Shown piece by piece: positions 2,233-64,000 of a stretch of 64,000 nucleotides of DNA (the stretch's first letter is position 1; every line of letters starts with the position of its first letter). The stretch is from Octopus sinensis (lineage: Eukaryota). The stretch is from contig NC_043017.1 in NCBI RefSeq assembly GCF_006345805.1, positions 4,340,001-4,404,000 of the forward strand, written 5' to 3'. The notes beneath the pieces are model-generated. The model was given only the letters and a program-made list of their open reading frames with translations. It searched no databases and was not told the DNA's origin. A program made the position numbers and the translations under genes.

Positions 2233-2793
2233 ATTATTTGGTTAAGCTTTCTTTACGCCATTTCACATAGCTGTGCTTTATAGAAGCTATTTGGCTGGCT
2301 ATCCCTTGTTAAAGTCATTTGACTAAGCAAGCTTTTTTTAATGACATTTGCTTTATTAATGTCATTTGTCTAACAGAGCTTTAATTCCAGTTGGCTAACT
2401 AAACTTTGTTAATTCCATTTGACCAACAAAGCTTTGTTAACATGTTTAATCTGTCCTACAAAAATATTGTGAGTAATTTTCTCATGACAACACCCAAATG
2501 AAAAATAAGACTTTCAATGGAAAAAATTTAGATTATTTTTACTCTGTCTCTTTCATGATTGTACATGTTATTATTATTTGTTGTTTTTTTATTATACTCA
2601 CTGTCAGGCTGCTGAAGATTCACTTGTGCTGCATTCCTGGCAATAGTATCTGTTAATTTCTTTTTTTTTTTTCATAAGTTTGAATAGGTGGAACAGTGCC
2701 CATGATGTTTGTGGTTAGTTGAAGATTGGTAAGAATGATAACGATGATGTTAAATTTGAACATTTGTTGGTTGCTACTCAGTAGATGAAAACA

Positions 2794-2845
<52 letters not shown>

Positions 2846-2849
2846 CCTT

Positions 2850-3122
2850 TATTCTTTTATTTGTTTCAGTCATTTGACTGCGACCATGCTGGAGCACCAC
2901 CTTAAGTCGAGCAAATCGATCTCAGGAGTTATTCGTTGTAAGCCTAGTATTTATTCTATCGGTCTCTTTTGCCGAACTGCTAAGTTATGGGGACATAAAC
3001 ACACCAGCATCGGTTATCAAGAGATGTTAGGAGGACAAACACAGACACACAAATATATATATATACACACACACACGATGGGCTTCTTTCAGTTTCTGTG
3101 TACCAAATCCATTCACAAGGGT
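2850..3122 (-). mobile_element. Family A SINE, partial
   Basis: ttgtttcagtcatttgactgcgaccatgctggagcaccacc...ttcagtttctgtgtaccaaatccattcacaagg is homologous to 10865-11260. Confidence 0.8.
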
Positions 3123-9895: not shown

Positions 9896-10752
9896 TGATG
9901 ATGATGTATACAAATTCTTAATGAGTATTTGCTCTGAAAGAATTAGGATTGTCGTCATCATTACCACCACTTTTATTTAAACAGAAGCAATTTAGTAAAG
10001 AAAACATTACTTGTATAATTATTTCTGTCCATTATTCTTGGTAATGGTGGTGCTGCAGATGGAAGGCAGTTTCTCAGAATATCTTGCTAATTTCCAGTTC
10101 CCCTACATCTCCATCAATTAGAGGTACTAAATCAATCTGGGTGGAGGTACAGTTTTGATGATGCCTATTCCCCTGCTGTATCTGATTCCATTCTCTTCTC
10201 TGCAACTCCTCCTGCCGCCGCCTCGCCTTACCGTTTTACTCTTTCCTATAAAATATGTCAAAGTTTAGTTCTGGTTTGTCTCACTAGGAAAATGCTTGAA
10301 TTCATTAATTTCTTCAGTGGGAGAAAGGAATCATTTGGAAATGTAGCTTTCAATGAAAGTGAGTAGGATGTATGGTGGGGAGAACATCAAGGTAATGAAT
10401 AAACGAAGGGGGTGGAAAAGTTGGGCATGTTTGTAAGTCCGCCCCCCCATCATCCGGGTTTTTTTTTTTCCTTAGAATAAAGGTGAAGCAAATTGTTTAA
10501 TTTCTATGAAGGGTCTCTGCTTAGTTTTGTTTAGAGAAAACGGGTGTTTTTTTTTCCCAACTGTTACCTCACTCCCCTCTCATTCAAAGGAATGAAATTC
10601 CCAAATTCGGTACCTTACCAGTATACACGCTGACAGGAAATGACACTTTGTCATCATTAAATAAGTTTTCTTATTTATTTATTTATTTATCTTTGTAAAT
10701 CAACTACAGAAATAGTAATTTTTATTATTTCATCCAAATTACTACTGTAGCT

Positions 10753-11260: not shown

Positions 11261-12129
11261 GCCTACATACAAATCTTGCTGGGTTTAGCTGTTAGTTGCA
11301 TCCTTCTTATCTCTGAGTGAATGGTTAAGTACCCGTGGTGTACAGAGGTAAATTTAATCTACTCAGGCTTTCTCCTCAAATTTCTGGCTCTGTGCATGCA
11401 TTTGTTAGAAATTTTTATGATGTCTTCAATTTGTGGTTTGAGAAATAGATCGAGTATATTGCACCTTGTTTTGCATCAAAAGGAAACAGCTATTTCTTGG
11501 TAAACATGCATAAGAGAGTGTTCAAGGTTAGCAAATACTGTGTGAATATGCCCCAGCAATATCTATAAATCTCACTATTTTTTTGGAACATGCCTAAGTC
11601 TATCTCTTTAGGCAATCTGCCAATGTATCTACAAAAGTGGTTGTTTATCATTCCAGCAGAGCCAATTAAAAATGGGATGAGGGACACTTTTTTTAAACTG
11701 TCATAATGCCTTTAATTATGTAATTAACAACACTTACAGACCTAGGCAATTGTAGTTTTGTGGTACATTCGTATGTCTTTTGTTATAGCTAATATTTTAA
11801 TGTCTATACACAAGTGGTTGAGTATTGTTTTCCATTTGAACTAATTACAAATAAGATGATACACTTTCACTGCTTCTATCATTTGACTGCAGCCGTGCTG
11901 GGCTACCAGCTTGAAGGGTTTCAGTCATTCACATTGATCCTAGTACATATTTTTACACCTGGTACATATCAATCTCTATTTGTTGATCTGCTAAGTTATG
12001 AGACATAAACAAAGGCTTTGTTTTCAAATGGTATCTATGTAAAAACAGACCCATACAAATAAGCATGCATGCCTGCATGAGTCTGTCAACTATGTGTATA
12101 TTGTACGAGTATGTCACATCTATAATAGC

Positions 12130-14924: not shown

Positions 14925-14980
14925 GTTTTGTACACATTGTCGAAACTTTCTAAAACAGAACTAGCTCAAAAGACTGCCAG
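14925..14980 (+). CDS. vav: Vav exon encoding the last helix of the calponin-homology (CH) domain (equivalent to vertebrate exon 3), phase 0-2
   Basis: Pyrimidine tract + ccAG | GTT TTG TAC ACA TTG TCG AAA CTT TCT AAA ACA GAA CTA GCT CAA AAG ACT GCC AG | GTatgc = VLYTLSKLSKTELAQKTA(R/S), 56 nt. Resembles human VAV1 VIYTLSALSWTPIAQNRG and VAV3 VIETLSRLSRTPIALATG (recalled). Phase 2 end fits the next exons. Confidence 0.92.
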
Positions 14981-24714: not shown

Positions 24715-24789
24715 AGGGTTCTCTCCTCCTGATACGAGACCTCTCACTATTGAACATGATTATTACAACACATTGGAGGATCTTGCAAC
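24715..24789 (+). CDS. vav: Vav acidic-region exon 4a (phase 2-2, 75 nt)
   Basis: Branch-like gctgac at about 24646, long pyrimidine tract, ttgtAG | A GGG TTC TCT CCT CCT GAT ACG AGA CCT CTC ACT ATT GAA CAT GAT TAT TAC AAC ACA TTG GAG GAT CTT GCA AC | GTAAGT = GFSPPDTRPLTIEHDYYNTLEDLA. In frame with the CH exon. Aligns to the Vav G-x-x-PFP...D-I-Y-x-x-L segment (Y142 region). Confidence 0.85.
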
Positions 24790-35251: not shown

Positions 35252-35329
35252 CGAGTTTCCACCCTTCGTAGAAACCCAAGAATACGATGAGGATGAAGAC
35301 ATTTACAGTAACCTTAAAGAGATGGCATT
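35252..35329 (+). CDS. vav: Vav acidic-region exon 4b (phase 2-2, 78 nt), paralog of exon 4a
   Basis: ttgctttctAG | C GAG TTT CCA CCC TTC GTA GAA ACC CAA GAA TAC GAT GAG GAT GAA GAC ATT TAC AGT AAC CTT AAA GAG ATG GCA TT | GTAAGT = EFPPFVETQEYDEDEDIYSNLKEMA. EDIYSNL matches VAV1 EDIYSGL (Y142). Confidence 0.9.
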
Positions 35330-35930: not shown

Positions 35931-35973
<43 letters not shown>

Positions 35974-36188
35974 GTGTATATATGTATGTATGTATATGTA
36001 TATATATATAATATATTTTTTATATATTTGTTGTTGATGTAATATATATAAATTTTTGATATTTGAAAAAATGTATGTATATATATATGTATTTATCTTT
36101 TATATGTCATCAATGTTTATGTAAATAATGTTTTGATAATTGAAAAAAATGTGTATGTGTATCTCTCTCTCTATATACATATTTATAT

Positions 36189-46600: not shown

Positions 46601-46703
46601 TGACTTACCAGATGACCATGAAGTGTATAACAAAGAAACACAAGATGATAATCAGCAGATATATGAGGATTTGTGCTCGCTTAAACGCAAATCCACTTCA
46701 CAG
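46601..46703 (+). CDS. vav: Vav acidic-region exon 5a (phase 2-0, 103 nt) with the Y174-equivalent IYEDL motif
   Basis: ggctttttccAG | T GAC TTA CCA GAT GAC CAT GAA GTG TAT AAC AAA GAA ACA CAA GAT GAT AAT CAG CAG ATA TAT GAG GAT TTG TGC TCG CTT AAA CGC AAA TCC ACT TCA CAG | GTaaaa = DLPDDHEVYNKETQDDNQQIYEDLCSLKRKSTSQ. IYEDL is the Vav autoinhibitory helix motif. Confidence 0.9.
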
Positions 46704-49498
46704 GTAAAAAAAAAAAAGAAAAAAAAAAGGAAATAATAATTGTTGTGCCAAATCAGTCAGTCACTGAAGTGTTTTTTTCTTTGTTTTTCATTTTTTTTTT
46801 GGGCCTTGAAGCATGTTTATTATTAATTCAGTTGTCTTTCTTTTTTTCTTTTCTTTGTTTAAACAAATATTTAATATTTCTTGCTTTCTATGTACAAACG
46901 TGTGTGTCTATATATATATTATATATATATAATATATATGTATATGCAAACACATACGCATATGCTCACACCAATATGTGTGTGTGTGTATATATATATA
47001 TATGTGCATATCTTTATATACATACTCTTCTACAGCCCCTTTCTTATTTAATTTAATTTTCCTTTATGTTATTTTTCTTAATCTTAGAAGAATTTATATT
47101 ATTTTGGAAGAAATGTTAATTCATTTTTCTTCCAAATATGAATATTTTCAAATGTAATGTTATTTCATTGAAATTTAGTATTTTCTTTTCTTTCTTTTTT
47201 TTTTTGTAATTTTCTAAGGGGTGGGGGTGGAATGTGTTGATTTTTTTTTGTTCTCTTTCTAATTGAATTTTAATTTCTTACTGAAAATGTCTAAGTAGCT
47301 TCCAACTTGTCTATGGTGTTACTTGTACCCAATCATGTTGCTAAACTTTAATACAGGTAGGATAGAATGAGTTAACAAGAAAATGGATTTATCAGGAAAA
47401 AAAAAAATCTCTCTTACATAAAACAAACAAAATAATGTTCTGCTTAAATAATGTAGCCTGTGTTTTTAACAGTGTACTTATTCTGATAACTGACTTTCCC
47501 CATGATTTATCTTTATCTAGAATGATTTTATGTGATATACAAATATTGCCTTTTTTCCCCTTTTTTTTAAATATATAAGATATTTTCAGAATATTTTCAT
47601 TTCATTTTTCTTTTTATAAAAGGTATCAATTCTGATAACATATGGATAATCTCTCTCTTTTTCTCTCTCTCTCTCTCTCTCTCAATGATAATATCTAGTA
47701 ACATTCCATCTGTCTGTAAACCCTTGGTCATACTCTCTCATCTTTAATATATCTTGTGTGTGTGTGTGGTGTGTGTGTGTGTATACATACATGTATACTT
47801 AAGTGTGAATGAGGAAGTACTCAATACCAAAATGTAGTTATATTAAAGAAAAGAAGAAAAGGAAAAAAAAAAAAACAAAGATGGTGAGCTGGCAGAATCA
47901 TTACGGCACCGGACAAAAGGCTCAGCAGTATTTCTTCCAGTTCTTTGCATTCACAGTTCAAATGCTGTTGTGGTTTACTTTGTGTTTCATCCTTTCAGGG
48001 TTGATAAAATAAAATAAAATAAAATGCTAGTTGAGCACTTGAGTTGATGTAATCGTTTAGTGCCCTTTCCCCAAATTCCCAGCCTTGTGCATATACTAGA
48101 AAGAACTGTTAACTGGGAGCTAAAATGTCCCTTATAGAAAAAAAAAAGAGAAGCAACAAACTCAGAGTAGTGATTTCTAATAAATGATTTTACTCCCCCC
48201 CCCCAGTTCAGTGATATACACCCTTCTCTGTATTAGTGCTCTACTCTATATAATAAAATGTAATTTAAGGAGATCAAGGCCCAAGGAAAGAAAAGGTAAA
48301 AAAGGGTGGTATTTTAGACTGGTGTGAGTAGATGAGCTTTTCATTAGACTTGGCAATCTGTTATATATCTTCTCTGATGAAAAACTTGGGTCCCCAAATG
48401 TTACACATTTCCTTTCTGCATTGTCCCCCCATAGCAATGGACTGTAACTCATTTTCTGCTTCTTACTTTATGGCATTATCACCCACGTCTCCTCATTTCA
48501 AAATGTCTCATATTAGCTATGGTCTCATTTGTTTCACTCTAAAACATCCCAGAAACAAACAAAACACATGCAATATGTTCCAAGTTCTGTATTATACAAA
48601 TTCCTCAGTATTTCTCAAATCTAATTTGAATTCAGTTATTGTTACCATTCTCCCAACTAAAGAATTTTTATAAATATAGGCATTATGTTTCTAATTTGCT
48701 GAAATGTCTTAAGTACTTTGTCGTGTTTGTAGTAATTCAAATTTTCAGAATTATGAATCCAATTATTTGCTTTTTTCACTCTAAATAGTTTCCTGTTCAC
48801 TGTTCTTGTGTTCCTATTTATAGCTGCTGGCTCAGTTTAAGGGATGGCTTCTTTCTCCTCAGAAATGTGAAGCACTTTGGAAATGAAGGTTATGAAAATA
48901 TGTAACAACTCAGATCAAAGGTAGATGATGAAAGTCATCAATAGTAGAATAGATGTGTAGTTAAGAAGCTTGTTTTGCAACCACAGGGCTTCAGTTCCAG
49001 AATTTGAGGATCTGTACAAAGATTTGGGGCAAGACATCTATCCATACAGAGGATACTGTTATGTTTACAACAGATATGACATAACAACAGTCATAGTCGA
49101 GTTGTGATTGACACCATAGAATCTGTCTCTGTGTGTGTGTGAGAGAGAGAGAGAGAGAAAGAAAGTTGGGAGAGCAACTCAATCCATTGCCATCTCTATT
49201 CAGCCATGTACGATGAAGAGATGGATTCACATCACCCCATTCTCACAACCTAGTAGAGGTCCTGCATAGTTTGTGGCTACAGTTCTTCCTCTGTATAATT
49301 CTACCCCACCCTCCTCCACCAGATAATAGATAAGAAAGATACGTATACACCACCAGTGCAGTATGTTAAGGGTCCAAATATATTATTCCGGTTATTTTAG
49401 ACATGAGCTTGGTTGTTGGGTTAACGAGTTCACTTTGTAACTCTGTAATTTTGGATTCCATCCCATTGGTTTGCACTTTTAGCAAGTATGGTGTCACC

Positions 49499-49790
49499 CA
49501 GTGCTTCTCAACCCATCTGATGTGGCATACCGGCAGTTTTTTTTTTCTCAGTGTGCCAAGGATTGGTAATATTTCTTAGAAATATTAATTTATACAGGAA
49601 ACAATATATATAATGAATATAATAAAAATCGACAATCTTTTTTATCTTCTATCTATTTTGCAAACAAATAATACAATATTACATAAGCATTTTATGATGT
49701 TTCTTTCTTTTCTGGAAACTCGCCACGTACCGGTGGCTGATGGCTCGCAGACTGGCACTGGTCTGTGAACCACCAGTTTGAGTAGCACTG
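49499..49790. mobile_element. hAT (Charlie-like) MITE
   Basis: TIR cagtgcttctcaac / gtttgagtagcactg. Degenerate 8-bp TSD gtgtcacc / gtgcaacc. Confidence 0.78.
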
Positions 49791-51174
49791 GTGCAACCAA
49801 TTCCATGTGAGTGGAATTTGGTACACAAATATAGTACAGAAGCCATCATGTGTGTGTATGTACATATGTACGTATGTATGTGTGTAACTATTTTCTTGCT
49901 TTCACATTGTCGCTATACGAGTAAACACAGTGTGAGTGTTTAGGGCTCTTGTAAACAATATGTCCTGCAGCTTGGCAGTTATTTGGGGGGATGGTTTTAG
50001 TGGAATATATTAACTTGAGAAACAAGAACTGGTAACAGGAAGGACATCTGGATGTGGAATGACTCTTGACCAACCCATGCCAGCATGGAAAAAGCAGGCG
50101 TAAAATTGATGATGATAATATTGGACATCTACTGTAGTTTAGTTGGTACCACTGACAAAATGCTTGTCGATAAACTTTCTATGAATTAATAATGGCTATT
50201 CCACTATACTTGCTTTTGTTTAGCTTCAGGTTAGTCCTGATAATAAAAGGTATTGCTACCTGTCTTTTATTCACCTCTGCAATACTTCAGACTACATTAT
50301 CCAGTGTTACAGGAATATTCACCCCTGCTTACCTCACACTACATTTTCCAATATGACATAGTTTATATTTAGCTTCTGCTCAGTGCATTGGGCAGTGTAG
50401 CATATCTGGGACTACCTCATTTGGGATTTCTGTTGTAAAGACCATTGGTGATCAAGGTCTCTAAGTTAGCAGGTTGTGTAGTATGCAGCTCATGTGTCAT
50501 AATTGGCACTACCTGTCAGTACCTGTGGTCAAGATATCTCTGAAGTGGTCCAGCATTCCTCTCAGTAAATAGATTACTGTGAAATACAAACAATTTGTAC
50601 TGTGTCTATTGGTGCTTAGCTTCAACTCAGCCTGGTTTGAGCTACACTCAAAAGACATTTCAGCTTTGACAATCTTGTCTCCTTGTATATATGTGAGGCT
50701 ACGTTATTCAGTGTTACATTCTTTATTTAAGATTATAGAGTGTAATATAAGAGAGATTTGGCTGCAATTTCTTGCATAGAGATTCACTCACTGATTTATG
50801 TTCTGCGAGTGTAGTTTGTATATGTATGATACCTGACTTGTGCCTGGATAGATGATATACGAGAGATGAAAAGGAAGTATTCAGGTATCGGAGTTGCTTC
50901 TAAATGTCTGATGTGCCACTGTTCAAGGCAAATTACCTTGCTAGGCTGAGAACGGGTTCCATATTTACTTTGTTGTTGAGTGACGAACACGGTTATTCAA
51001 CCATAGAAATAATAGCTCTGATAATGCATAAATGTCTTAAATTTCATCTCTTATCATCACGGAAACTGCCATGTAATTTTAATGCTAAAACATGCACACA
51101 CACACATACACACACACATGCATACAAAATTCAAACAAGTGATTGGATTTAGAAACTCATGCTATATTCTAGAA

Positions 51175-51393
51175 CAGTGGTTTTCAACCAGGGTTCCGCA
51201 AAACTTTAGGGTTCCGCCAGTACAGTCCAGGGGTTCCGCAAGAAGTTACAAAACTGCTAAAATCGGCAGTAATTTTTATTTCTCCTGTGCAGATATGTGT
51301 GCATAAGACTATTAAATTATTGCACAGGGGTTCCTCGAGCCAGTGGAATGTTTCCTTGGGGTTCCGCTCCTGCAAAAATGTTGAAAAGCACTG
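51175..51393. mobile_element. hAT (Charlie-like) MITE with perfect 8-bp TSD
   Basis: TIR cagtggttttcaac / gttgaaaagcactg. TSD ttctagaa at 51167-51174 and 51394-51401. Confidence 0.88.
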
Positions 51394-52798
51394 TTCTAGA
51401 AGTTCGTTTTTTAGACTAATTCTTGCCGCCATCCTGTCAATTTGTTCACAAATGGCAACAAACCATTCTTATGTTATTTCTTATAATAAAGCTCTGTCAT
51501 CTCTATGCCGGCATCATTGACAACGATCTTAAACAATATAATCACCATCACCACAGAAGCAAATGGGACGACAGCCTGTTCATGGTAATTTCAAGTCATA
51601 GAAGGAACATCTTCATAATCTTTTGGGTTGCAAGATATATATTTGCCTAATCTCCCTTAAATTGCATTATTGTCTTAGAAAAAGAAACACACATTGGATG
51701 TTGTAGTCTTAAATTTGGCGGCAGTTCTAATTCTGTCATACAGTTTAACACAACCACTTGACTCTCATGTGCCTTTAGCCATGTCTGTCTGTTTTGTTGC
51801 AAGTATGTGAATCAAGTCTCTCAACTTCCCACTGTCTTAGATGCTTTTTGAAAATTGAGATGAAGGATTGCTTTTCTCTTTTGATTGAGCCATAAAAAAA
51901 ATCATAAAAAAAGAAAAAAAAAGATAAACTATGGGATTGTCATGGCTGGAACGCCTTTGTTTGCAGTTTGAAGAACTTGAGAGTAAACAACAACAACACC
52001 ATAATTAAAAACAGTCGTGCCACCAACACCATTACGATCACCTTCATACGTCTGTTGGGTTGGGACCGGACTGGGCGGAGGGAAGGTGGTAGTGTGTGTG
52101 TGTGGGGGGAACTAAACTATAACAACAACAACAACAACTATACAATTTCTCTTGAGTATTTGCATTAGTTTTTTGTTGTTTTATTTTGTCTTTTATTTTT
52201 TGTTTTTATTCTTGTTGTTTTCGTAATTTATCACAAGTTTTTGTCTTCAGCCTCCTCCTCCTCCTCCTACAACCACTGCCACAATCTGACCATCGTCCAC
52301 AAACCTTTCTGCTACTGTACATAGAATTAATATGTTCACCCTTCCTTTCCAGTCTTGCCCTTCACCTCAGTCTGATGTTACCACCACCACCACCACCACC
52401 ACCTTGCACCACATCTGTTCTTCCTCCCCCTCTTATTTTTTAATTATATTTTTTCCCTCTTTTTTTTTTAAAGAAATTTCTTTCCAGTGATGTTTGCTGT
52501 TTTTTTTTATATTTTTCATTTCGTTATTTTTTTCTTTTTATTTACTGTTTTTTAGTTTTAATTTTTATTTTGATAATTTTTTTTGTTTTATTTTGTTTGA
52601 TCAATGTTGTCTTTTCATTTTATTTCCTTTTATTTTATTTTATTTTGTATTCTTGATTTCTAATTTTATATTTTTTATTTTTTGCTGTTTTTTTTTGTTG
52701 TTGTTGCTGCTGTTGTTTTGATAGTAGGTGTTTGTTTGTTTGTTGTTAGTTGTTGTAATCCATATAAGCTTTGTTGTTGTCGTTGTTGTTGTATATAG

Positions 52799-52907
52799 TG
52801 AGAATGACTTGGATGATAACCAGGATTTATATGATGTTGTGTACGACGGCGAGGAAGATGAACAGATTTATGAACACTTGTGTATTCGACATCAAAGATT
52901 CTCCACA
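52799..52907 (+). CDS. vav: Vav acidic-region exon 5b (phase 2-0, 109 nt), paralog of exon 5a
   Basis: gtatatAG | T GAG AAT GAC TTG GAT GAT AAC CAG GAT TTA TAT GAT GTT GTG TAC GAC GGC GAG GAA GAT GAA CAG ATT TAT GAA CAC TTG TGT ATT CGA CAT CAA AGA TTC TCC ACA | GTAAGT = ENDLDDNQDLYDVVYDGEEDEQIYEHLCIRHQRFST. Closely matches VAV3-type EDLYDCVYGEDEGGEVYEDL (Y160/Y174 region, recalled). Embedded in track ORF 52728..53027. Confidence 0.9.
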
Positions 52908-53653
52908 GTAAGTCAGCACAGAAAAGATTTCCTTCTCTCACATTACCCCCCCCCATGTCCCACCCCCCTCAGACAGCTGCTGGTCCCCCCCCCCCCACCA
53001 ATCTACAACCTTTTAAAACTATATTGAATTTAACCATCACATGTAGTACAGTGTCACATATAACAAATGCATTGTCTCAAGCAATATGGTGGCGAAAGGG
53101 ACACGGTCTCATGGCAGAATGCCTCCTGCAACACTGTGTCACATTACAGCATAATGACTTGTGTCACATGGCACAGTATGACATGTAACATGGTGTCACA
53201 AACTTTATGGTTTTACATATTGGATGGTGTTACATATGACATGGTGGTTTTTAACCATGGTGTCACACAGATATGACACAATACACTGTATCATATACAG
53301 CATGGTTTTACATATAAACATTGTGTTATTCATATATATATATATATCATCATCATCATCATTGTTTAACATCCACCTTCCATGCTAGCATGTTTTGGAC
53401 GATTTTGACTGAGGGCTGGCGAACCAGACGGCCGCACCAGGCTCCAATCTTGATCGGGCAAAGTTTCTACAGCTGGATGCCCTTCCTAATGCCAACCACA
53501 TGTATGTATGTATGTATAGCATGGTGCCATTGGAACTGTAGATCAGACCAAACTGTTGAAATAGGTCAAGTGAAACTGGAACTTGTACTTTGTTCTCTCA
53601 TTCAGTTTACCTCAGTGGGTCCACAGAGGATGATAAACAGATATTACATTGAA

Positions 53654-53882
53654 CAAGGCGGCGAGCTGGCAGAGTCGTTAGCACGCCGGGCGAAATGCTT
53701 AGCGGTATTGTGTCTGTCGTTGCGTTCCGAGTTCAAATTCCGCCGAGGTCAACTTTGCCTTTCATCCTTTCGGGGTCGATAAATTAAGTACCAGATACGC
53801 ACTGGGGTCGATGTAATCGACTTAATCCGTTTGTCTGTCCTTGTTTGTCCCCTCTATGTTTAGCCCCTTGTGGACAATAAAG
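53654..53882 (+). mobile_element. Family B SINE, young monomeric copy with 19-bp TSD
   Basis: TSD aaacagata(t/a)..cattgaa at 53635-53653 and 53883-53901 (1 mismatch). Intact head ggcggcgagctggcagagtcgttagc and B box gagttcaaattcc. Confidence 0.85.
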
Positions 53883-55055
53883 AAACAGATATAACATTGA
53901 AAGGATCATCTCATCTCCTAAGCCAAGATACTGTAGGCAGCCCAGGACATTTTACATCATACACATTTTTCGGTGAACGGTAGTTTTTTTTATCGACGAG
54001 ATTGTTGTGTAGCCCCAGGTCAGTCCTGATCGAGCAGTTGTGATCAACCTTGCCTTGTTTTTAGAGGTGTGCTTTATCCAATGTATACATTACTTATTTT
54101 TAAAACGAAAGTGTGCAATTTGAGGGAGATTTAGTTGCTGTGTATTTAGTAGGTTGAACTACTAAATACAATCCCCTTTGTGGATTTATATTCATGGCAG
54201 TTTTTACTGTTAGCTGTAGCTCTGTGTGTGTGTGTGTGTGTGTGTCTTATCCCTCCCTCTCTTAAATAATATGGTAGAACATCAAAGCTGATGTTGTCTC
54301 ATCCTGGAAACAGTCAATATGTCGTGGTTTGCATGTATTCATTCACATTCATGTCCCTCACCAGTGTTACCGATCACCTCCTTTTCTTAGTAAGCATGTT
54401 CTGCTTGGTGTTAAACAAGAAATTGTATGGTTTCCTTATTGTTTGTTATTTGTTTTATTCTATTAAAAAATTTTTTTTTTTTTTTTGTTAATGTATATCT
54501 CAGATCTATTGTTTGCCACCTGCCCTCCCACCTTACCTGACCGATCTGACTATGCCATCAACCTTGCAGCCACTTCTCCAGACTAAATCAAACTGTTGCT
54601 TATTAGTGTTGTTAAGGTAGCAAACTGGTAGACTCGTTAGCGTGCTGGTCAAAATGCTTTGCAGTGTTTCATTTGTCTTTACATTCTGAGTCCAAATTCT
54701 GCTAAGATTTGACTTTGCTTTTCACCCCTTTTGGGGGCTGATAAAATAAGGACCAGTTGAGCACTAAGATTAATGAAACCTACCTAACCCCGCTCCCTCC
54801 GATCTTTCTGGTCTTATGCCAATATTTTAGTAGCGTTGTTATTTTAAAAAATTTTTTTTACCAAGATCTCTCAACTTTAACATTGTTGCTGTTTTAATAA
54901 CAGACCTTGATTAAATCATGGCCTAGTTTATCGACCTCTATATCTAAACCAATTCTAATTCCTCATATTGAATTCCCTCAATAATGAGCGAACATTTCAT
55001 AAAACTGATGCTAAAGTTGACATTATTACTAGAGCATTGGTGTAGTGAGAGAATG

Positions 55056-55445
55056 TCTTGTTAGCATTCCATCGCTTACGACGACAAGGGTTCCAGTTGA
55101 TCCGATCAACGGAACAGCTTGCTCATGAAATTAACGTGCAAGTGGCTGAGCACTCCACAGACACGTATACCCTTAATGTAGTTCTCGAGGGATATTCAGC
55201 ATGATACAGAGTGTGACAAAGCTGGCCCTTTGAATTACTGGCACAACAGAAACAGGAAGATAGAGTGAGAGAAAGTTGTGATGAAAGAGTATAGCAGGGA
55301 TCGCCACCAACCCCGGCCGGAGCCTCGTGGAGCTTTAGGTGTTTTCACTCAATAAACACTCACAACATTCGGTCTGGGAATCAAAACCACGATCCTATGA
55401 CCGCGAGTCCGCTGCCCTAACCACTGGGCCATTGTGCCTCTACAA
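55056..55445 (-). mobile_element. Family C SINE, full length with 10-bp TSD
   Basis: Reverse complement of 13761-14147. TSD tgagagaatg at 55046-55055 and 55446-55455. Confidence 0.88.
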
Positions 55446-57299
55446 TGAGAGAATGATTGAGTATTAAAGGTATCAACTGATTTATGTCAGAGGTATAGCT
55501 GTAGTTATCATCCATGGATGTAGATGGATGATAACTGCCATGAGCTGGCTGGTTGGTTGGTTGGTTGGTTGGTGCTGCAAGATAGTTTTGAAAATGGAGA
55601 AGAAATTAGGGGGTCAAATGTGAGCATGTTGCCCCTTTCAGGTGAAATGACAGAAATATGTTGATAAGACCATATTGCAAACTTTTAAGGACGATGATGA
55701 TCAGTTGTTGTTGTTGTTTAGATCCAGGTCTGGCTTAATTTTATAGGTCTATAATCAACGGTCTTCCAACCATGACCATCCTTGACTTTCCAGGTTACAT
55801 TATCCAATATGCCCCTATCTTTTTAAAACAGTAGAGTGTGATATGAGGCAGGATTTCAGTGCTATTTTTAGGATGTCAACTAATATTGCTTACAAATTTG
55901 GGCACTGGGCCATTATTTTCAGGTGAGGCAGGTAAGTCACTTACATCGACCCCAGTACTCAACTGGTACTTATTTTCTTGACCTTGAAAGGATGAAAGGC
56001 AAAGTCAACCTCCGCAGAATCTGAACTCAGGACGTAAAAATGGATGAAATGCTGCTAAGCATTTTGCCTGGCATGCTAACAATTCTGGCTTCAAGAAATA
56101 ATTATTTAGCTTTAAATCAACCTTGACTCTGTAGACTTGTAATCCAAGATATTCCTATCATGATCTCATGTTTTATTCTGAGGATATTTTTCAATATGTC
56201 CTTTATTTTTAAAGAGGCCAGTACAATGTAGTCACATTGTTGTTGTTATGTTGGCAGGAACCTATTTTCAGATATTAAGTTTCTTGAGAAATTCCTTAGC
56301 TGATAAAAGATAAATTAGGGAGCCAAGAAAAGGGCCTCTGTATAGTCATTCAACTGGCTAACTCTATCTTGAATCACACCCTGTGTCTTAAAAAAAAATT
56401 GGAACAAATATTATTGTACAATGTAAGCCTGGGTCATCATCATTTTACTTCTACTTTTCCATGTTTGCATGGGTCAGATGGACTTTGTTGAGGTAGATTT
56501 TCTATGGCTGGATGCCCTTCCTGTTGCCAACCCTCACCTGTTTTTCATATCTGAATATTTTCTCAGGGAAGACTGGAAACAAACAACCTCATATGATAAT
56601 GATACCCTTTTACAACCATCATGCAATATTCAGACGTGGGTATATACATATATCCACACACATACCCATGACGGGCTTCTTTCAGTTTAATGTCGACCAA
56701 ATCCACTTACAAGGCTTTGATCAGCTTCGGGCTATAGTAGATGACACTTGCTCAAGGTACTGGTCAGTGGGACCACTTGATTGGGAAGCAAGCTTCTTCT
56801 TAACCACACAGTCATGCTTAGATATAAAAAAAATAAGAAATATAGAAAGAAAAAAAAAGACTGGATGATCATGGTTGGAACACTTTTGTATCTCTGTCTG
56901 CACACTCAGGAATGACCTGGGAATAAATAACAGTTGAACGTAGCAACTAAAGTAATATTTTCCATATGTATGTTCCCCGAGTATTGCGATTGAACTTCTA
57001 AACTGCTTTGTCTACAAATGTTAGATTCATTCCTCTCTTCCTCTTCTTTCATATTAATTCTAGAACTGAGGGGTGGGGGTGGGGTTACAATGGCTAAAAA
57101 TTTAGACTAATAATTTCAGCATTTATAATTCGGTACTACTTGGTCTGCAGCTTTCTTCCTGTTAAAATCTTTTAAATAATGCTGTTTGATTGTTTTGGAT
57201 TTTGTTTTTCATCCATATTAAAGTTCTTATGATTAAAGCATCAGTTAACTGCTGCCATCAGTCTAATCAATTAGACCTTTCTCAAAATTGCTGGTATTA

Positions 57300-57344
<45 letters not shown>

Positions 57345-57348
<4 letters not shown>

Positions 57349-58025
57349 GTTTTGGCATTGCTTTAATTTATGTGAGTTGCTAAGTTCCACCCAAGTCTCG
57401 ATTATAATTGATGTTCTGAATTCAGATTCTGCTGAGGTTCTCTTTGCCTTTCATTCTTTTGGGATCAGTAAATTTAGTACCAGTTGTGTACTGGGGTTGA
57501 TCTAAATTGACTGACCCCCCCCCCACAAAAAAATTTCAGGCCTTGTGCCTATAGTAGAAAGGATTATTATTATTATTATTATTATGTTTTGGTTTTCCTT
57601 TAGTTTATGTGAGTTGCTAAGTTGCACTCAAGTCATGATTATAATTATTTATGCTCTGAGTTCAAATTCTGCTGAGGTTGACTTTGCCTTTAATCCATCC
57701 AGGGTCAATGAAATAAGTACCAGTTCAACACTGGGGTTGATGTAATTCTGAAATTTAAACAATTATTATCATTATTATTATCATCATCATCATCATCATC
57801 ATCAATAAGGTGGTGAGCTGGCAGAATTGTTAGCACACTGGGCAAAATGCTTAGCAGCATTTTGTCTGTCCTTATATTCTGAGTTCAAATTTCACTGAGG
57901 TTGACGTTGCCTTTCATCCTTTTGGGGTCGATGTAAAAAGTACCGGTTATGCACTGACGTCGACATAATTGAGTAGTCTCCTCCCACCAAATTTCAGGCC
58001 TTGTGCCTATAGTAGAAAGGATTAT
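57345..58025 (+). mobile_element. Cluster of three family B SINE bodies separated by (ATT)n/(ATC)n tails
   Basis: Three repeats of ctgagttcaaattctgctgaggttgactttgcctt..catc..ggggtc..gtacc. Other degenerate copies at about 4990-5200(+), 7290-7660(-), 22490-22650(-), 34540-34710(-), 47880-48110(+), 54610-54830(+), 55890-56090(-) and 58990-59650(+). Confidence 0.75.
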
Positions 58026-58419
58026 TATTATCATTATTATTTTCTTCTTCTTCTTGACTCAGAATTGATCTTATTTCTGGTAGAATTTCTGTGGGTGGTT
58101 ACTACCTGTTCCCTTAGATATCCCTATGGTTCCAATAAGTCCATCAAGTGCTCAGAACCCTCCTACTGTTCCCAAGAGGTAAACCTTCTGTAGAAGCTTT
58201 ACAATATCCTTTTGTCCATTGGATTATTTCATCACTCACAGTCCCTAATGCACCAGTTATCACAGGTACAACTTTTACAGATCTGATGTGTAATCTCAAA
58301 TTTTAAGGGGTTGTAGTTTTTCATCTTTTCATTTGTTTTCTTCACCATCTTAGTATCAAATGGACCAGATGGATCAGTCAGATTACAAATCCAATTTTCC
58401 TTGTCTATTACTGTATTAT

Positions 58420-58972
58420 TATTATTGAGTGAGAGAACAGTGCATGCCATCAAAGTGACACTGGGAAGCCCAGTATACTCATCATGACTACCCATCTGAT
58501 AAGGGTACACTAGGCACATGCATCACAACAATGTGTGCGCGACATGGTAATCTCATATCAAGATAAACAGCACATGACCTTGCAGGTGGAGCCCAGTTAG
58601 AACTTTCTTCTGGTCGAGTAACCCATCCTGCTCAAAAGGTCCCTGAATAAGGGTTGTTTAAGGATGTTGAACGAAACACCCATGTTTCCAGAGGTGAATT
58701 ATTCAGACCCCAAAGAATCCCTCTCAACACACAGCTATGATGCTCCCCCACTACTTCAGCTCGTGATCAGAGATGCACATATCATCAGCCACTAAGGGAC
58801 ATGCTCAACTGGTTACGGTTGAACAACTGACAAGCAGATCTGCGGCATTGAGCAGAATATTTACTGTAGCCCATCTTTTTATACCAAAACAAAACAATGT
58901 ACATGATAACACTTCCAATCAGTTAAGATCAGAAGGCCACGAGAGCTACTGCCTGGTACTGCATCAGGGCTT
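58420..58972. mobile_element. Unclassified interspersed repeat
   Basis: Higher-GC block bounded by (ATT)n/(AAT)n tracts. Resembles a recurrent octopus repeat from recall only, and there is only one copy in this window. Confidence 0.4.
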
Positions 58973-59814
58973 AATAATAATAATAATAATAGCAGTGAGC
59001 TGGCAGAATTGGTAGTGCATTGGACAATGTGCTTAGCAGCATTTCCTCTGGCTCTTTACACTCTGAGTCCAGGTTCTACCAAGATCAACTTTGATCCTTT
59101 CAAGATCAATAAAATAAGTACAAGTCGAACACTGAAGGCAACGAAATTGATTAATCCCTTTCCATAAAAATTGCTGGCATTGTGTCAAAATTAGAATTAT
59201 TATTATTTTTATGACTACCCTTTTCTGATAGAGTGCCAAAAATGTTAGAGCATCAGGCAAAATATTTTGCAGTATTTCTTCTGGGTCTTCATGTTCTGAG
59301 CTTAAACTCTATTGAGGTCAACTTTTTGCTTTTCACCCATCTGGGTGTGATAAAGTACTGGAATTGATTTAATTGGCTTCATCCACCTCTATACCACCCA
59401 GTTTGAGGGCTTGTTATTATTAACATAGAGGTTGATAGGTTGGCAGATTGATTTGAGCATTGCATAACATGCCTCTTGTTATCTTTCCCAGCTTTTTGTT
59501 ACGAGTTCAAACCACACCAGGGTTATCTGTGCCTTTCATCTTTTCGAGTTTGACAAAATTAAATACCAACGAAATACTGGGCTGATGGTATTGACTAACC
59601 ACCTGCTTCCCCTAAATTTCAAACCTTGTGGCTATGCTAGAAAGTTACAATCTCACTGGGTTTGAGGTGATTTTTCTAACTGCCAAGACTCGATAAAACA
59701 AAGTATCCTTCTGGTTGCTGAGGCCTGTATATTGTATGTGTGTGTGTGTGTGTGCGTATATATAATTAACTATCTCTTCTTCCCTAAAATGTATGACCCT
59801 CTGCCAATGTTATA

Positions 59815-59819
59815 GATCT

Positions 59820-59850
<31 letters not shown>

Positions 59851-59885
59851 CATTTATTGTCATCATCATCATCACTATAATTATG

Positions 59886-59955
<70 letters not shown>

Positions 59956-60014
59956 CATTTATTGTCATCATCATCATCACTATAATTATGTTATTATATT
60001 ATTTATTATTATTA

Positions 60015-60045
<31 letters not shown>

Positions 60046-60093
60046 TATTATTATTATCATTTATGTCATCATCATCATCATCACTATATTATG

Positions 60094-60163
<70 letters not shown>

Positions 60164-60216
60164 TTATCATTATTGTCATCATCATCATCACTATAATTAT
60201 GTTATTATTATTATTA

Positions 60217-60276
<60 letters not shown>

Positions 60277-60443
60277 CATCATTATTGTCATCATCATCAT
60301 CATCATCATCACTATAATTATGTTATTTATTATTATTATTATTATATTATTATTATTATTATTATTATTATATTATTATTATTATTATTATTATCATTTA
60401 TTGTCATCATCATCATCACTATAATTATGTTATTATTATTATA

Positions 60444-60503
<60 letters not shown>

Positions 60504-60572
60504 CATCATTTATTGTCATCATCATCATCATCACTATATTATGTTATTTATTATTATTATATTATATTATTA

Positions 60573-60620
<48 letters not shown>

Positions 60621-60869
60621 CATCATTATTGTCATCATCATCATCACTATATTATGTTATTTATTATTATTATTATATTATTATTATTATTATATATTAT
60701 TATTATTATTATATTATTATTATCATCATTTATTGTCATCATCATCATCACTATAATTATGTTATTTATTATTATTATTATATTATTATTATTATTATTA
60801 TTATTATATTATTATTATTTTTTATTATTATTATCATTTATTGTCATCATCATCATCACTATAATTATG

Positions 60870-60939
<70 letters not shown>

Positions 60940-60980
60940 TATCATTTATTGTCATCATCATCATCACTATAATTATGTTA

Positions 60981-61040
<60 letters not shown>

Positions 61041-61098
61041 CATTATTGTCATCATCATCATCACTATAATTATGTTATTTATTATTATTATTATTATA

Positions 61099-61152
<54 letters not shown>

Positions 61153-61438
61153 CATCATTTATTGTCATCATCATCATCACTATAATTATGTTATTATTAT
61201 TATTATATTATTATTATTATTAATTATTATTATTATTATTATTATTATTATCATTTATTGTCATCATCATCATCACTATAATTATGTTATTATTATTATT
61301 ATATATTATTATTATTATTATTATTATATTATTATATTATTATATATTATTATTATATTATTATCATCATTTATTGTCATCATCATCATCATCACTATAA
61401 TTATGTTATTTATATTATTATTATTATTATTATTATTA

Positions 61439-61470
<32 letters not shown>

Positions 61471-61526
61471 TATCATTTATTGTCATCATCATCATCACTA
61501 TAATTATGTTATTTATTATTATATTA

Positions 61527-61567
<41 letters not shown>

Positions 61568-61745
61568 TATTATTATTATTATTATATTATTATCATCATT
61601 TATTGTCATCATCATCATCACTATAATTATGTTTTTATTATTATTATTATTATTATTATTTATTATTATATTATTTTATTATTATTTATTATTATTATTA
61701 TTATTATCATCATTTATTGTCATCATCATCATCACTATAATTATG

Positions 61746-61822
<77 letters not shown>

Positions 61823-61882
61823 CATTTATTGTCATCATCATCATCACTATAATTATGTTATTTATTATTATTATTATTATTA
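59815..61882. repeat. Compound satellite: 19 conserved cores separated by variable (ATT)n tracts (period about 110 bp)
   Basis: Core tcatttattgtcatcatcatcatcactataattatgtta counted 19 times from about 59850 to 61860. Confidence 0.92.
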
Positions 61883-63777
61883 AACTAGAAACAATTATTA
61901 TTATGGAAGCTTTTTCTTGATATCTGCTGTATTTACACATTATCCACTGGATGCTACCCAAACACCTGAGGTAGATAACACCTGATATGATGTTCTTATT
62001 ACATTGGATCATTATATGATGTTGAGAAGTGTTAGGACTGCATGAATTTTTTTAAAATCTACATAAGTGCTCAAAAATTCTATTCACTAATGTTAATTTA
62101 GAGAAACATTAGAGCTATGTTTCTCAAAAGTACTGCCATAAATTTTACAGAAATCTGTATTAATATTTGAGCATCTTGGAGACTTGAAATTCATTTTATT
62201 ATTATTCACAAATGCGATAAATAAAACAAGGTAAGCATTAGTTTTCTATATGTAACTTCCTAAATGAATTTCATCAGTAATTTCTTTGTTTGATCTCCAG
62301 TGTACCACTAAGTCAAATCACCTGAGAATCAGTGCTAAATACCTTGCTCTACATTGTTCTATACCTCTACATTCTGAGTTCAGATTCTGCCATGGTCACC
62401 TGTCACTCCTTCCTCATTATATCATTGGGGTACCATTAAGTAATTTTCCTTCATGCAGTGTGTCTCTAGAGGAGTAAAAAGCTGTATGGAAGTTTACATT
62501 CCTCTCAAAACTATATTACCTCTGAAATAAAAAAAAGAGTTTATTTTAGCACAGAAGGCTAATGGAACACCTGTCAGCTTGTCAGCATTGCCTCAGCTTA
62601 CAGCTGCAGGTTATATTTTTTAGATATTTCTCTGTATCTTGCATTTTGTGAATGATAGCAAGGCTGGTTCTGTGTTTCCAACTTGTGATATGATATCACG
62701 AGTGATAAAGGGGAGCCTGTTTTACACGAGTAGAAAAAATACCCCAAAGCATTTGAAAACACTAGATTTACTGCCAATTTTTACCAATATACTATCCCCC
62801 CCTCTCTCTCTCTCCACACACACACACACACAGAGCTTCTGTTAAGTTTCTGTACACCAATTTTCACTCCTGAAGCATAGTTCAACCCAAGGCAAGAAAG
62901 CACTTGCCTAAGTACTGTGCTATGGGATTGAACCTCTGGACCATGTATATGCAAAGAGAACTTCTTAACAATATAACTACGCTCATAACAACACAAGGTG
63001 TTCCTACTCTTGTTAGAGACAGTGTATTTAATGCTGTTGTCATGGACACAAACCCATCACCACCTGGCTGCTTGTCTCACCTCCTATCCACTGGGCCATA
63101 CCCATTCTCAGATTAGGTTTAATACATTATCTTATATTATCTCTAATATATTAATCTTATGTTATATAATTGATACATATTTCTAATCAACTTCAACTGG
63201 CCTGTTTTCTACACACACACACATGCACACACACATAGTGTGCTTATAAATATGAAAAATGAGATTTTATTGAATATGAAATAAATCAAGATAACTTTGG
63301 TAAATTATAGACACATATTACTATTTATAGTGCATGTGTGATATTTTATATGCAATATTACTCATATTACATGTGTCATGTTACATATATGACATGTGTG
63401 ATATTAATGATATAAGACATGCAATTTTATTTGTATTGCATATAGATTTTTTTTTTTTGCTTGTATTGCAAATTGATAATTAAATCTTAGATTAATTGGT
63501 AGAACTTGTTCAAACTCCTATCAGAGACCTTTGATCAATGGTGGTCAAGCTGTGATTATTCTTGCTTTTTATTCAGACACTGCCTCTAGGACTACAGTAT
63601 CCAAAGTGTCCTTCAGTCGTATCTATGGAAACAGCTTGACCGAATGGTTAAGAGTGGATGTGGCATGGACAAATGGTTAAGTTGCTAGCTTTGTAATTAC
63701 CAGGTCCTGTGTTCAATCTGACTGCTTGGTGTCTTGGGCAAGAATCTTACTGAATGGATTACTCTTGTGATTCCAAG

Positions 63778-63907
<130 letters not shown>

Positions 63908-64000
63908 CCATGTGTGAATTACACTGAAGGCACACATATTCTAATTCACTGAGCAGGTAGTCCAGTTGATCAAATTATTCACTACTCATTACTGAAACTG

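What the first reader, a model, noticed from the sequence alone, without database searches (positions are those of the whole stretch)
46601..52907. Exons 5a and 5b are obligatorily mutually exclusive; they swap IYEDL for IYEHL at the Y174-equivalent site
Seen: both exons start in phase 2 and end in phase 0 (103 and 109 nt). If 5a is joined to 5b, 5b is read from its first base, giving TGA as the first codon. Skipping both also breaks frame if the next exon is phase 0, as in vertebrate Vav. 5a: EVYNKETQDDNQQIYEDLC (2 Tyr). 5b: DLYDVVYDGEEDEQIYEHLC (3 Tyr). Inference: the D-to-H change at pY+2 and the different upstream Tyr should alter DH-blocking strength and SH2/kinase recognition. The 6.1-kb separation excludes steric exclusion, so exclusivity must come from NMD, RNA pairing or splicing factors.
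Basis: partly seen in the sequence, partly recalled or inferred. Interest (0 to 1): 0.8.

Follow-up and report, generated by a model that had tools for sequence, protein, structure and literature searches.

The report
Alternative exon pair in Vav's autoinhibitory region
Two old, duplicated coding exons of an invertebrate Vav gene encode alternative versions of the tyrosine-bearing switch that keeps this Rho-GTPase activator off, and their lengths mean a working mRNA can carry only one; this is an ordinary kind of alternative splicing in a place where the papers searched do not report it.

Summary
Exon 5a (46601-46703, 103 nt) and exon 5b (52799-52907, 109 nt) lie on the + strand with AG/GT borders. 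Both follow a phase-2 intron and end in phase 0. Joining them gives TGA as the first 5b codon.

With exons 3 and 4, each aligns to mouse Vav1 residues 111-181, covering Y142, Y160 and Y174. The two exons are paralogues (shuffle p = 2e-4).

Both are real coding exons. A 5a orthologue and a 5b orthologue in other species keep their splice sites, stay 1 mod 3, and show dN far below dS. A distant relative carries the same pair in the same order and phases, followed by a phase-0 DH exon. Two other species have a single copy.

A frame-enforced mutually exclusive pair is therefore well supported. No transcript data could be reached.

His occurs only here and in one close relative, and I-Y-x-x-L is kept in both exons. 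The conserved differences are in the Y160 segment and the linker.

Steric and U12 mechanisms are excluded, and no conserved RNA pairing was found.

A second duplicated pair, 4a/4b, encodes the Y142 segment.

This is a new member of a known kind, of moderate interest.

The parts
14925..14980 (+). Vav exon encoding the last piece of the CH domain (VLYTLSKLSKTELAQKTA). It is 56 nt and ends with 2 dangling bases (AG).
   Evidence: The borders are ccag|GTT ... CAG|gtatgc. It aligns to mouse Vav1 111-128.
24715..24789 (+). Exon 4a, 75 nt: a|GFSPPDTRPLTIEHDYYNTLEDLA|ac. It is an alternative version of the Y142 segment.
   Evidence: tblastn with a Schistosoma Vav fragment (P0128) gives E = 1.4e-4. The borders are ttgtag|A ... 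AAC|gtaagt. It aligns to the same Vav1 residues as 4b. The shuffle test against 4b gives p = 0.006.
35252..35329 (+). Exon 4b, 78 nt: c|EFPPFVETQEYDEDEDIYSNLKEMA|tt. It carries the Y142 motif DEDIYSNL and ends with 2 dangling bases.
   Evidence: The borders are ttctag|C ... ATT|gtaagt, with a stop just past the donor. It aligns to Vav1 DEDIYSGL.
46601..46703 (+). Exon 5a, 103 nt (1 + 34 codons): DLPDDHEVYNKETQDDNQQIYEDLCSLKRKSTSQ. This is the Y160/Y174 segment, 5a type.
   Evidence: The orthologue in L001 keeps its splice sites and is 100 nt, with dN 0.05-0.065 and dS saturated. A 5a-type exon lies at L005:435-534.
46704..52798 (+). The 6,095-nt intron between 5a and 5b. It has a U2-type GT-AG, an A-rich tract at its 5' end (46706-46740), and a roughly 350-nt T/GT-rich stretch at its 3' end (about 52440-52798).
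   Evidence: No further Vav-like exon lies inside it.
52799..52907 (+). Exon 5b, 109 nt (1 + 36 codons): ENDLDDNQDLYDVVYDGEEDEQIYEHLCIRHQRFST. This is the Y160/Y174 segment, 5b type, and the one closer to vertebrate Vav.
   Evidence: The orthologue at L002:2318-2423 is 106 nt, keeps its splice sites and IYEHL, and has dN 0.072 and dS 0.46. A 5b-type exon lies at L005:10222-10327.

Best explanation
Exons 5a and 5b are tandem duplicates of the single Vav exon that encodes the second half of the acidic region. That half holds the Y160 segment, the Y174 helix that plugs the DH catalytic site, and the linker to the DH domain.

Both copies are translated in some transcripts and kept by selection. 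The ancestral exon is 1 mod 3, so it follows a phase-2 intron and is followed by a phase-0 intron. A productive mRNA must therefore contain exactly one copy.
- 5a+5b gives a stop at the first 5b codon.
- Neither exon gives a frameshift.

This makes the pair a frame-enforced mutually exclusive exon pair.

Inferred, not shown: the choice is made by trans-acting splicing regulators acting on ordinary U2-type sites. Joint inclusion or joint skipping is removed by nonsense-mediated decay, or yields only a truncated CH fragment.

Inferred consequence: two Vav isoforms share the same I-Y-x-x-L docking face. They differ in the Y160 segment, in acidity (12 against 9 D+E) and in the linker, so they probably differ in autoinhibition strength and in which kinases open them.
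For: Gene identity:
- Spliced 3-4b-5b and 3-4b-5a each align to mouse Vav1 111-181 in PDB entries 3ky9 and 6nf1, with the Y142, Y160 and Y174 motifs in register (32.9 and 26.9 bits).

Paralogy:
- tblastn E = 8e-4 and shuffle p = 2e-4.

Selection on 5a:
- In L001 only the exon plus splice sites aligns (81% nt).
- There are 13 synonymous against 5 non-synonymous codon changes and one 3-nt indel, with dN 0.065 and dS about 2.

Selection on 5b:
- In L002-L004 the atatag|T and ACA|gtaagt borders are kept, with one 3-nt indel, dN 0.072 and dS 0.46.

Pair conserved in a distant relative (L005):
- The 5a-type exon is 435-534 (100 nt). The 5b-type exon is 10222-10327 (106 nt).
- Order and phases are the same as in the window, and both are 1 mod 3.
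- The first DH exon, 11925-12026, follows in phase 0.
- There too, joining both or skipping both gives stops.

Single-copy outgroups with the same phases:
- L011 has an exon 5 of 91 nt, 1 mod 3.
- The insect locus L012 shows one copy.

Frame outcomes were checked by translation.

Such pairs are common among known mutually exclusive exons. [quoted passage not shown]
Against: - No cDNA or RNA-seq junction for this species or its close relatives could be reached. All spliced Vav fragments recovered come from distant taxa and hold one Ac copy.
- The next exon is not in the window, so its phase is deduced here and read only in the relative.
- An AG at 52801-52802 (GAG) would give a 105-nt, phase-0 version of 5b that joins 5a in frame.
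- Orthology of the 5a types is suggestive but not proven. The window's 5a scores slightly higher against L005's 5b-type (93) than against its 5a-type (75).
Confidence: 0.8

Rival explanations
1. One of the two exons is a dead duplicate (pseudo-exon) that is never spliced into productive mRNA, so Vav has a single constitutive exon 5.
For: There is no transcript evidence. 5a has a weaker donor (gtaaaa, no G at +5) and 5b has a G-interrupted pyrimidine tract.
Against: - Both exons keep an open frame, canonical splice sites and 1-mod-3 length in other species, with only 3-nt indels and dN far below dS.
- Introns around them do not align at all.
- The pair persists in the distant relative L005.
Confidence: 0.06
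2. Both exons are included together in frame, giving a Vav with two Y174 helices. This would use the alternative acceptor GAG|AAT at 52801-52802, or an undetected intervening exon of length 2 mod 3.
For: Translating 5a plus 5b from base 52803 stays open...KSTSQNDLDDNQ.... The GAG is present in all three species because it is the Glu codon.
Against: - GAG is the least used acceptor trinucleotide, and it sits 4 nt after a TAG (established splice-site consensus, my own knowledge).
- Every spliced Vav fragment recovered from other animals has one Ac copy.
- No extra Vav-like exon lies in the 6.1-kb intron.
- In L005 the same frame clash is conserved.
Confidence: 0.04
3. Exclusivity is actively imposed by competing RNA structures, with a docking site pairing with one of two selector sequences as in Dscam1 or 14-3-3zeta. 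Frame and decay would then be only a backstop.
For: - An A-rich tract directly after the 5a donor (46706-46740) recurs at the same place in L001.
- It is complementary to T-rich tracts upstream of 5b (pairs I8, I15, I23).
- A T-rich block about 200 nt upstream of 5b is weakly collinear with L002.
Against: - The complementarity is low-complexity A:U. Duplex energy with the region upstream of 5b ranks only 16th of 338 windows, and other T-tracts pair better.
- No non-repetitive conserved intronic blocks were found between the window and L001, L002 or L005.
- L005 has no A-tract after its 5a-type donor.
Confidence: 0.1
4. The pairs in the window lineage and in the L005 lineage arose by independent duplications of the same exon (recurrent evolution), not by one ancient duplication.
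For: - The window's 5a scores 93 against L005's 5b-type and 75 against its 5a-type.
- L005's two exons are 64% identical in DNA against 53% for the window pair.
- Recurrent tandem exon duplication is a known phenomenon (PMC3342872, listed, abstract only).
Against: - L005's 5a-type is clearly closer to the window and L001 5a exons (75, 81) than to any 5b-type (34-50).
- The 5a types share derived features: D[LM]PD[DE], CS[LI]K...SQ, shorter length and the upstream position.
Confidence: 0.2

Closest known systems
Frame-incompatible clusters of mutually exclusive exons made by tandem exon duplication, as catalogued for human and Drosophila (Pillmann et al. 2011, PMC3228551; Hatje et al. 2017, PMC5740500)
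   Same: The exons are neighbouring and internal, with similar length, the same splice-site type, the same phase and detectable homology. Their lengths are not divisible by three, so joint inclusion gives a premature stop. This is true of 60% of human clusters.
   Different: VAV is not mentioned in the main text of either paper. Here validation by splice-junction reads is missing.
PKM exons 9/10 (pyruvate kinase M1/M2); my own knowledge, not tested here
   Same: A duplicated exon pair of equal phase, with lengths not divisible by three, swaps a regulatory segment of an otherwise identical enzyme. The choice is made by trans-acting factors.
   Different: It is a different protein. There the segment forms an allosteric pocket, whereas here it is a phospho-regulated autoinhibitory helix and its flanks.
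Vertebrate Vav1 acidic region (structures 3ky9 and 6nf1; Y142, Y160, Y174)
   Same: The order of motifs is the same, and both 5a and 5b keep I-Y-x-x-L. The reported DH contacts are I173 and Y174, and Y142 and Y160 contact the DH and PH domains.
   Different: The spliced vertebrate Vav fragments recovered here each hold a single acidic-region copy. The Vav review says isoforms exist in all species but that nothing is known of their signalling specificity (PMC4601183).
Docking-site/selector systems (Dscam1, 14-3-3zeta, Mhc; PMC6071210 was listed, abstract only)
   Same: Mutually exclusive choice across long introns.
   Different: No conserved complementary intronic elements were found here.

Membership tests
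Vav family guanine nucleotide exchange factor (gene identity) | The end of the CH domain is followed by an acidic region with the three regulatory tyrosine motifs, in register with Vav1. | tested here: met
   phmmer against PDB sequences: spliced exons align to mouse Vav1 111-181 at E = 6.7e-7 (5b form), 4.6e-5 (5a form) and 1.4e-4 (4a-5b form).
Vav family guanine nucleotide exchange factor (gene identity) | A DH-PH-C1 catalytic cassette lies downstream of the acidic region. | tested here: inconclusive
   No DH exon lies in 52908-64000, so the intron exceeds 11 kb. In the relative L005 the 5b-type exon is followed by four DH exons.
[quoted passage not shown] | Neighbouring internal exons of about the same length (difference of at most 20 aa, at least 15 aa each). 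| tested here: met
   34 against 36 codons. The exons are adjacent, with no other Vav-like exon between them.
[quoted passage not shown] | Same splice-site type and same reading frame, with split codons conserved and no in-frame stop. | tested here: met
   Both are AG...GT, each starts with 1 base of a split codon, each ends in phase 0, and both frames are open. The same holds in L001, L002 and L005.
[quoted passage not shown] | Sequence homology between the exons. | tested here: met
   tblastn E = 8e-4. Shuffle p = 2e-4, z = 5.1.
[quoted passage not shown] | Junction reads run from each exon to the flanking exons, bridging the other. There are no joining reads except frame-shifting ones. | not testable with these tools
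   No transcript data for this species or its close relatives were reachable. Protein searches returned only genomic ORFs for them.
Frame-incompatible (decay-policed) type of mutual exclusion | Exon lengths are not divisible by three, so joint inclusion or joint skipping gives a premature stop. | tested here: met
   103 and 109 nt. 5a+5b gives TGA at once. In L005, joining both or skipping both gives stops.
Frame-incompatible (decay-policed) type of mutual exclusion | Aberrant transcripts are actually degraded by nonsense-mediated decay. | not testable with these tools
   This needs an experiment.
Steric-hindrance type of mutual exclusion | The donor of the first exon lies too close (under about 50 nt) to the branch point of the second. 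| tested here: not met
   The intron is 6,095 nt. The threshold is taken from PMC5740500.
U2/U12 spliceosome-incompatibility type | One intron of the cluster has U12-type splice sites. | tested here: not met
   All donors read gtaagt, gtaaaa or gtatgc, and none reads [AG]TATCCTT. All acceptors are AG preceded by pyrimidine tracts.
Docking-site/selector RNA-pairing type | Conserved intronic docking sequence complementary to a selector next to each variant exon. | tested here: inconclusive
   Only low-complexity A/T complementarity was found, ranking 16 of 338. No conserved non-repetitive intronic blocks were found. Comparative intron coverage is small.

The most novel reading that the evidence does not exclude
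The whole phospho-regulatory acidic region of this Vav is built from two consecutive duplicated-exon clusters. 4a/4b encodes the Y142 segment and 5a/5b encodes the Y160/Y174 helix segment. Splicing could therefore produce up to four different autoinhibitory modules on one catalytic core. This would be an old, conserved, splicing-encoded way to set the activation threshold and kinase preference of a Rho exchange factor, possibly with coordinated choice between the two clusters.
Probability: 0.35. Interest if true: 0.65.

Novelty: new member of a known kind. Interest (0 to 1): 0.45.

Why it matters
Vav proteins are the textbook case of a Rho exchange factor held off by an acidic-region helix and switched on by tyrosine phosphorylation. 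Invertebrates have a single Vav gene, and the 2014 Vav family review states that nothing is known about the signalling specificity of its splice isoforms (PMC4601183).

A conserved exon pair that swaps exactly the Y160/Y174 segment offers natural, selected variants of the autoinhibitory module. The two forms could be compared directly for exchange activity, opening kinetics and kinase preference. The mechanism itself, frame-incompatible duplicated exons, is ordinary.

Tried and rejected
It found exon 4b, exon 5b and exon 3, but no CH exons 1-2 and no DH exon in the window.
- The first word-index protein search, with exon 4 + 5a + 5b, found only the 5a relative P0001 and missed P0002. A negative from that tool is therefore weak.
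The job was rerun with 5b alone.
- P0003, the second hit of that search, is a repeat protein and was discarded.
- The apparent exon-4-like hit at L005:8004-8054 has no splice sites and was rejected.
- A scan of metagenome contigs with the exon alignment found nothing.
- Searches for run and assembly accessions in papers found nothing, so the organisms remain unnamed.
- Rfam, tRNA and Pfam scans of the window gave nothing.
- The first RNA duplex script timed out.
- The A-tract/T-tract pairing idea was tested and is not exceptional.
- Apparent matches of L001 and L005 to window 35945-36141 fall on TA microsatellite.
- Literature searches for Vav together with mutually exclusive exons or exon duplication returned only unrelated papers.
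Full report
**What is in the sequence**

The window is repeat-rich, AT-rich eukaryotic DNA with no gaps. On the + strand it holds five short exons of one gene, separated by introns of 6-11 kb.
- Exon 3: 14925-14980.
- Exon 4a: 24715-24789.
- Exon 4b: 35252-35329.
- Exon 5a: 46601-46703.
- Exon 5b: 52799-52907.

All have AG acceptors behind pyrimidine tracts and GT donors.

Exon 5a is 103 nt and exon 5b is 109 nt. Each begins with one base that completes the codon left open by the two dangling bases of exon 4, and each ends on a full codon. Splicing 5a to 5b puts TGA as the first 5b codon. The intron between them is 6,095 nt.

**Gene identity**

Spliced 3-4b-5b and 3-4b-5a peptides were searched against all PDB sequences. 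Each hits mouse Vav1 (3ky9, 6nf1) over residues 111-181, the only significant match for either.
- DEDIYSNL aligns on Y142.
- DLYDVV or EVYNKE aligns on Y160.
- QIYEHL or QIYEDL aligns on Y174.
- The 5b form scores E = 6.7e-7 (32.9 bits) and the 5a form 4.6e-5 (26.9 bits).

No CH exons 1-2 lie upstream and no DH exon lies in the 11 kb downstream. The window therefore covers only the CH end and the acidic region of a Vav gene. The organism could not be named with the tools at hand. It looks like an invertebrate with very long introns, but that is an impression, not a result.

**The two exons are paralogues**

tblastn of 5b against the window finds 5a at E = 8e-4. A global BLOSUM62 score against 5,000 shuffles that keep the acidic composition gives p = 2e-4. 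Identity is only about 30% (10 of 33 aligned residues), so the duplication is old. Motif and similarity scans find no third copy in the window.

**Both are selected coding exons**

Exon 5a:
- A 2-kb genomic contig of another species (L001, Logan run ERR3431203) aligns to the window only over 5a and its splice sites, at 81% identity.
- It has 13 synonymous and 5 non-synonymous codon differences and one 3-nt deletion.
- dN is 0.05-0.065 with dS saturated.

Exon 5b:
- An exhaustive HMMER search found P0002. Its 4.4-kb contigs come from three runs of one species (L002-L004).
- They again align only over the exon. The borders atatag|T and ACA|gtaagt are kept, IYEHL is kept, and there is one 3-nt deletion.
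- dN is 0.072 and dS 0.46.

**The pair is conserved in a distant relative**

A profile search found 5b-like genomic ORFs in more distant species (P0004-P0008). One lies on a 592-kb contig, of which 20 kb could be read (L005). It carries the following.
- A 5a-type exon at 435-534, 100 nt: DHDMPDEAEFQPGDQEEKIYDDLCSIKHSSDSQ.
- A 5b-type exon 9.7 kb downstream at 10222-10327, 106 nt: ENDLDDNEEIYDKVYQEEDEEIYEDLCSRKKRESR.
- The first DH exon at 11925-12026, starting in phase 0, followed by three more DH exons.

The order is the same, the phases are the same, and both exons are again 1 mod 3.

L005's 5a-type is closer to the window and L001 5a exons than to any 5b-type (scores 75-81 against 34-50). 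The 5a types also share D[LM]PD[DE], CS[LI]K...SQ and the shorter length. I therefore favour one old duplication. Independent duplications are not excluded, because the window's 5a scores 93 against L005's 5b-type.

**Single-copy outgroups**

Two other lineages show one copy with the same intron phases.
- A compact unnamed species (L011) has an exon 4 of 54 nt and an exon 5 of 91 nt.
- An insect, Homalodisca (L012), shows one copy in the region read.

Spliced Vav fragments from other animals all hold one acidic-region copy with [IV]Y.DL.

**Exclusivity**

Both copies are translated somewhere, otherwise selection at the amino-acid level would not be seen. Each is 1 mod 3, so a productive mRNA must hold exactly one.
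- Joint inclusion stops at once in the window, and at the third codon in L005.
- Joint skipping shifts the frame, giving stops inside exon 6 in L005.

That follows from both exons ending in phase 0, and it was read directly in L005.

One loophole exists. The Glu codon GAG at 52800-52802 offers an AG four bases after the normal acceptor. A 105-nt version of 5b starting at 52803 would join 5a in frame. GAG is the poorest acceptor and sits just after a TAG, so I rate this low (my own knowledge of splice-site consensus).

**How the choice is made**

- Steric hindrance is out, because the intron is 6.1 kb.
- U2/U12 incompatibility is out, because all sites are U2-type.
- RNA pairing was tested by looking for complementary and conserved intronic elements.
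  - Only low-complexity matches appear.
  - An A-rich tract right after the 5a donor is also present in L001 and can pair with T-rich tracts upstream of 5b. The duplex energy ranks only 16th of 338 windows of the same size.
  - Apart from a weakly collinear T-rich block about 200 nt upstream of 5b shared with L002, no intronic block outside simple or dispersed repeats is shared with L001, L002 or L005.

The most likely arrangement is therefore regulated choice by splicing factors on ordinary sites, with the frame clash as backstop. This is inferred, not shown. 5a has a good acceptor but a donor without G at +5 in all three species. 5b has a G-interrupted pyrimidine tract behind a roughly 350-nt T/GT-rich stretch, and a strong gtaagt donor. 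This matches the commonest situation in human, where 60% of clusters have lengths not divisible by three (PMC5740500).

**What the swap changes**

His is present only in the window and its close relative L002. In L005 the 5b-type has IYEDL and the 5a-type IYDDL, and other protostome sequences read Y[EQH]DL.

The published docking contacts of the helix are I173, in a pocket of F320, L325 and V328. Y174 contacts T205, Y209, V328, Q331 and R332 (bioRxiv 10.1101/2021.05.10.443419). I, Y and the L at +3 are identical in 5a and 5b. By helix geometry Y+2 should point away from the DH domain (inference).

The differences kept across species lie elsewhere.
- 5b-types have [LI]YD.VY, close to vertebrate DLYDCV at Y160. 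5a-types have a single aromatic residue in a non-acidic setting.
- 5b is more acidic (12 against 9 D+E).
- The linkers to the DH domain differ.

Y142 and Y160 help hold the closed state by contacting the DH and PH domains (PMC4601183). The isoforms therefore most plausibly differ in the strength of the closed state and in priming phosphorylation. This is inference.

**A second pair upstream**

Exon 4a (GFSPPDTRPLTIEHDYYNTLEDLA, 75 nt) was found with a Schistosoma Vav fragment at E = 1.4e-4.
- It has the same phases as 4b (78 nt).
- It is weakly similar to 4b (p = 0.006).
- It aligns to the same Vav1 residues, with its second Tyr on Y142.

Their lengths are divisible by three, so frame does not force exclusivity: 3-4a-4b-5b stays open. 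The exon order 4a, 4b, 5a, 5b shows exon-by-exon duplication rather than duplication of a two-exon block.

**Comparison with what is known, and novelty**

By the published sequence criteria for mutually exclusive exons, the pair qualifies. The criteria are similar length, the same splice-site type and frame, and homology (PMC3228551). In that study, only 0.56% of exons not annotated as mutually exclusive shared those features.

The transcript criterion could not be tested. No paper in the searchable library links Vav with mutually exclusive exons or exon duplication, and VAV is absent from the main text of the human catalogue.

This is a new member of a well-known kind. The interest lies in where it sits, on the autoinhibitory switch of a much-studied signalling enzyme, not in how it works.

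**Limits**

- There are no transcripts.
- Comparative data for each exon come from a handful of short contigs.
- dN/dS values rest on 31-35 codons.
- The protein word-index search is demonstrably incomplete: it missed P0002.

Noticed in passing
window 24715-24789 and 35252-35329: A second duplicated exon pair (4a/4b) encodes alternative versions of the Y142 segment. The phases are the same and the lengths are 75 and 78 nt, so joint inclusion or skipping stays in frame. 4a looks like the usual invertebrate form (DYYN.LEDL) and 4b like the vertebrate form (DEDIYS.L).
   Followed up: partly
window 46706-46740; L001 1630-1645: An A-rich tract directly after the 5a donor is present in both species, although synonymous sites are saturated. 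It can pair with T-rich tracts upstream of 5b, but no better than with many other T-tracts (rank 16 of 338).
   Followed up: partly
window about 52440-52798; L002 1968-2087: A roughly 350-nt T- and GT-rich stretch runs up to the 5b acceptor. It includes a weakly collinear block (TTGATyrATGTTGTCTTT) about 200 nt upstream that is shared with L002. It may be a binding platform for splicing regulators.
   Followed up: no
window 52799-52848 against L002 2318-2367: The first 50 nt of 5b differ at only one base between the two species, although dS over the whole exon is 0.46. This hints at an extra constraint at the RNA level, or it may be chance.
   Followed up: no
window 52801-52802: An AG inside the first full codon (GAG) of 5b would give a 105-nt, phase-0 version of the exon that could join 5a in frame. 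It is conserved in relatives because it is coding.
   Followed up: partly
window 59822-61882: A 2-kb (ATT)n microsatellite of about 692 copies, where GC falls to 10%.
   Followed up: yes
window 12130, 15849, 17044, 30472, 31558, 38429, 53347, 56499; and 1836, 2069, 7428, 7654, 34702, 47883, 53653, 56087, 57413, 57655, 57804, 59498: Two dispersed short repeat families of about 150 and 170-200 nt, at 70-86% identity and SINE-like in size, fill the Vav introns. Copies flank 5b. They have no Pfam, Rfam or tRNA match.
   Followed up: partly
L011 (Logan SRR24442794) 800-3800: A very compact Vav gene in an unnamed species, with CH, acidic-region and DH exons within 3 kb. It has single copies of exons 4 and 5 and the same intron phases, so it is a useful outgroup.
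   Followed up: partly
all protostome sequences recovered: In most invertebrate Vav fragments recovered, including every 5a-type and 5b-type exon, the residue after the Y174-motif Leu is Cys ([IV]Y.DLC). Exceptions are L011 (Phe) and the isopod P0037 (Val), and several flatworm-like fragments lack the motif. The vertebrate fragments have Met or Ile at that position.
   Followed up: no
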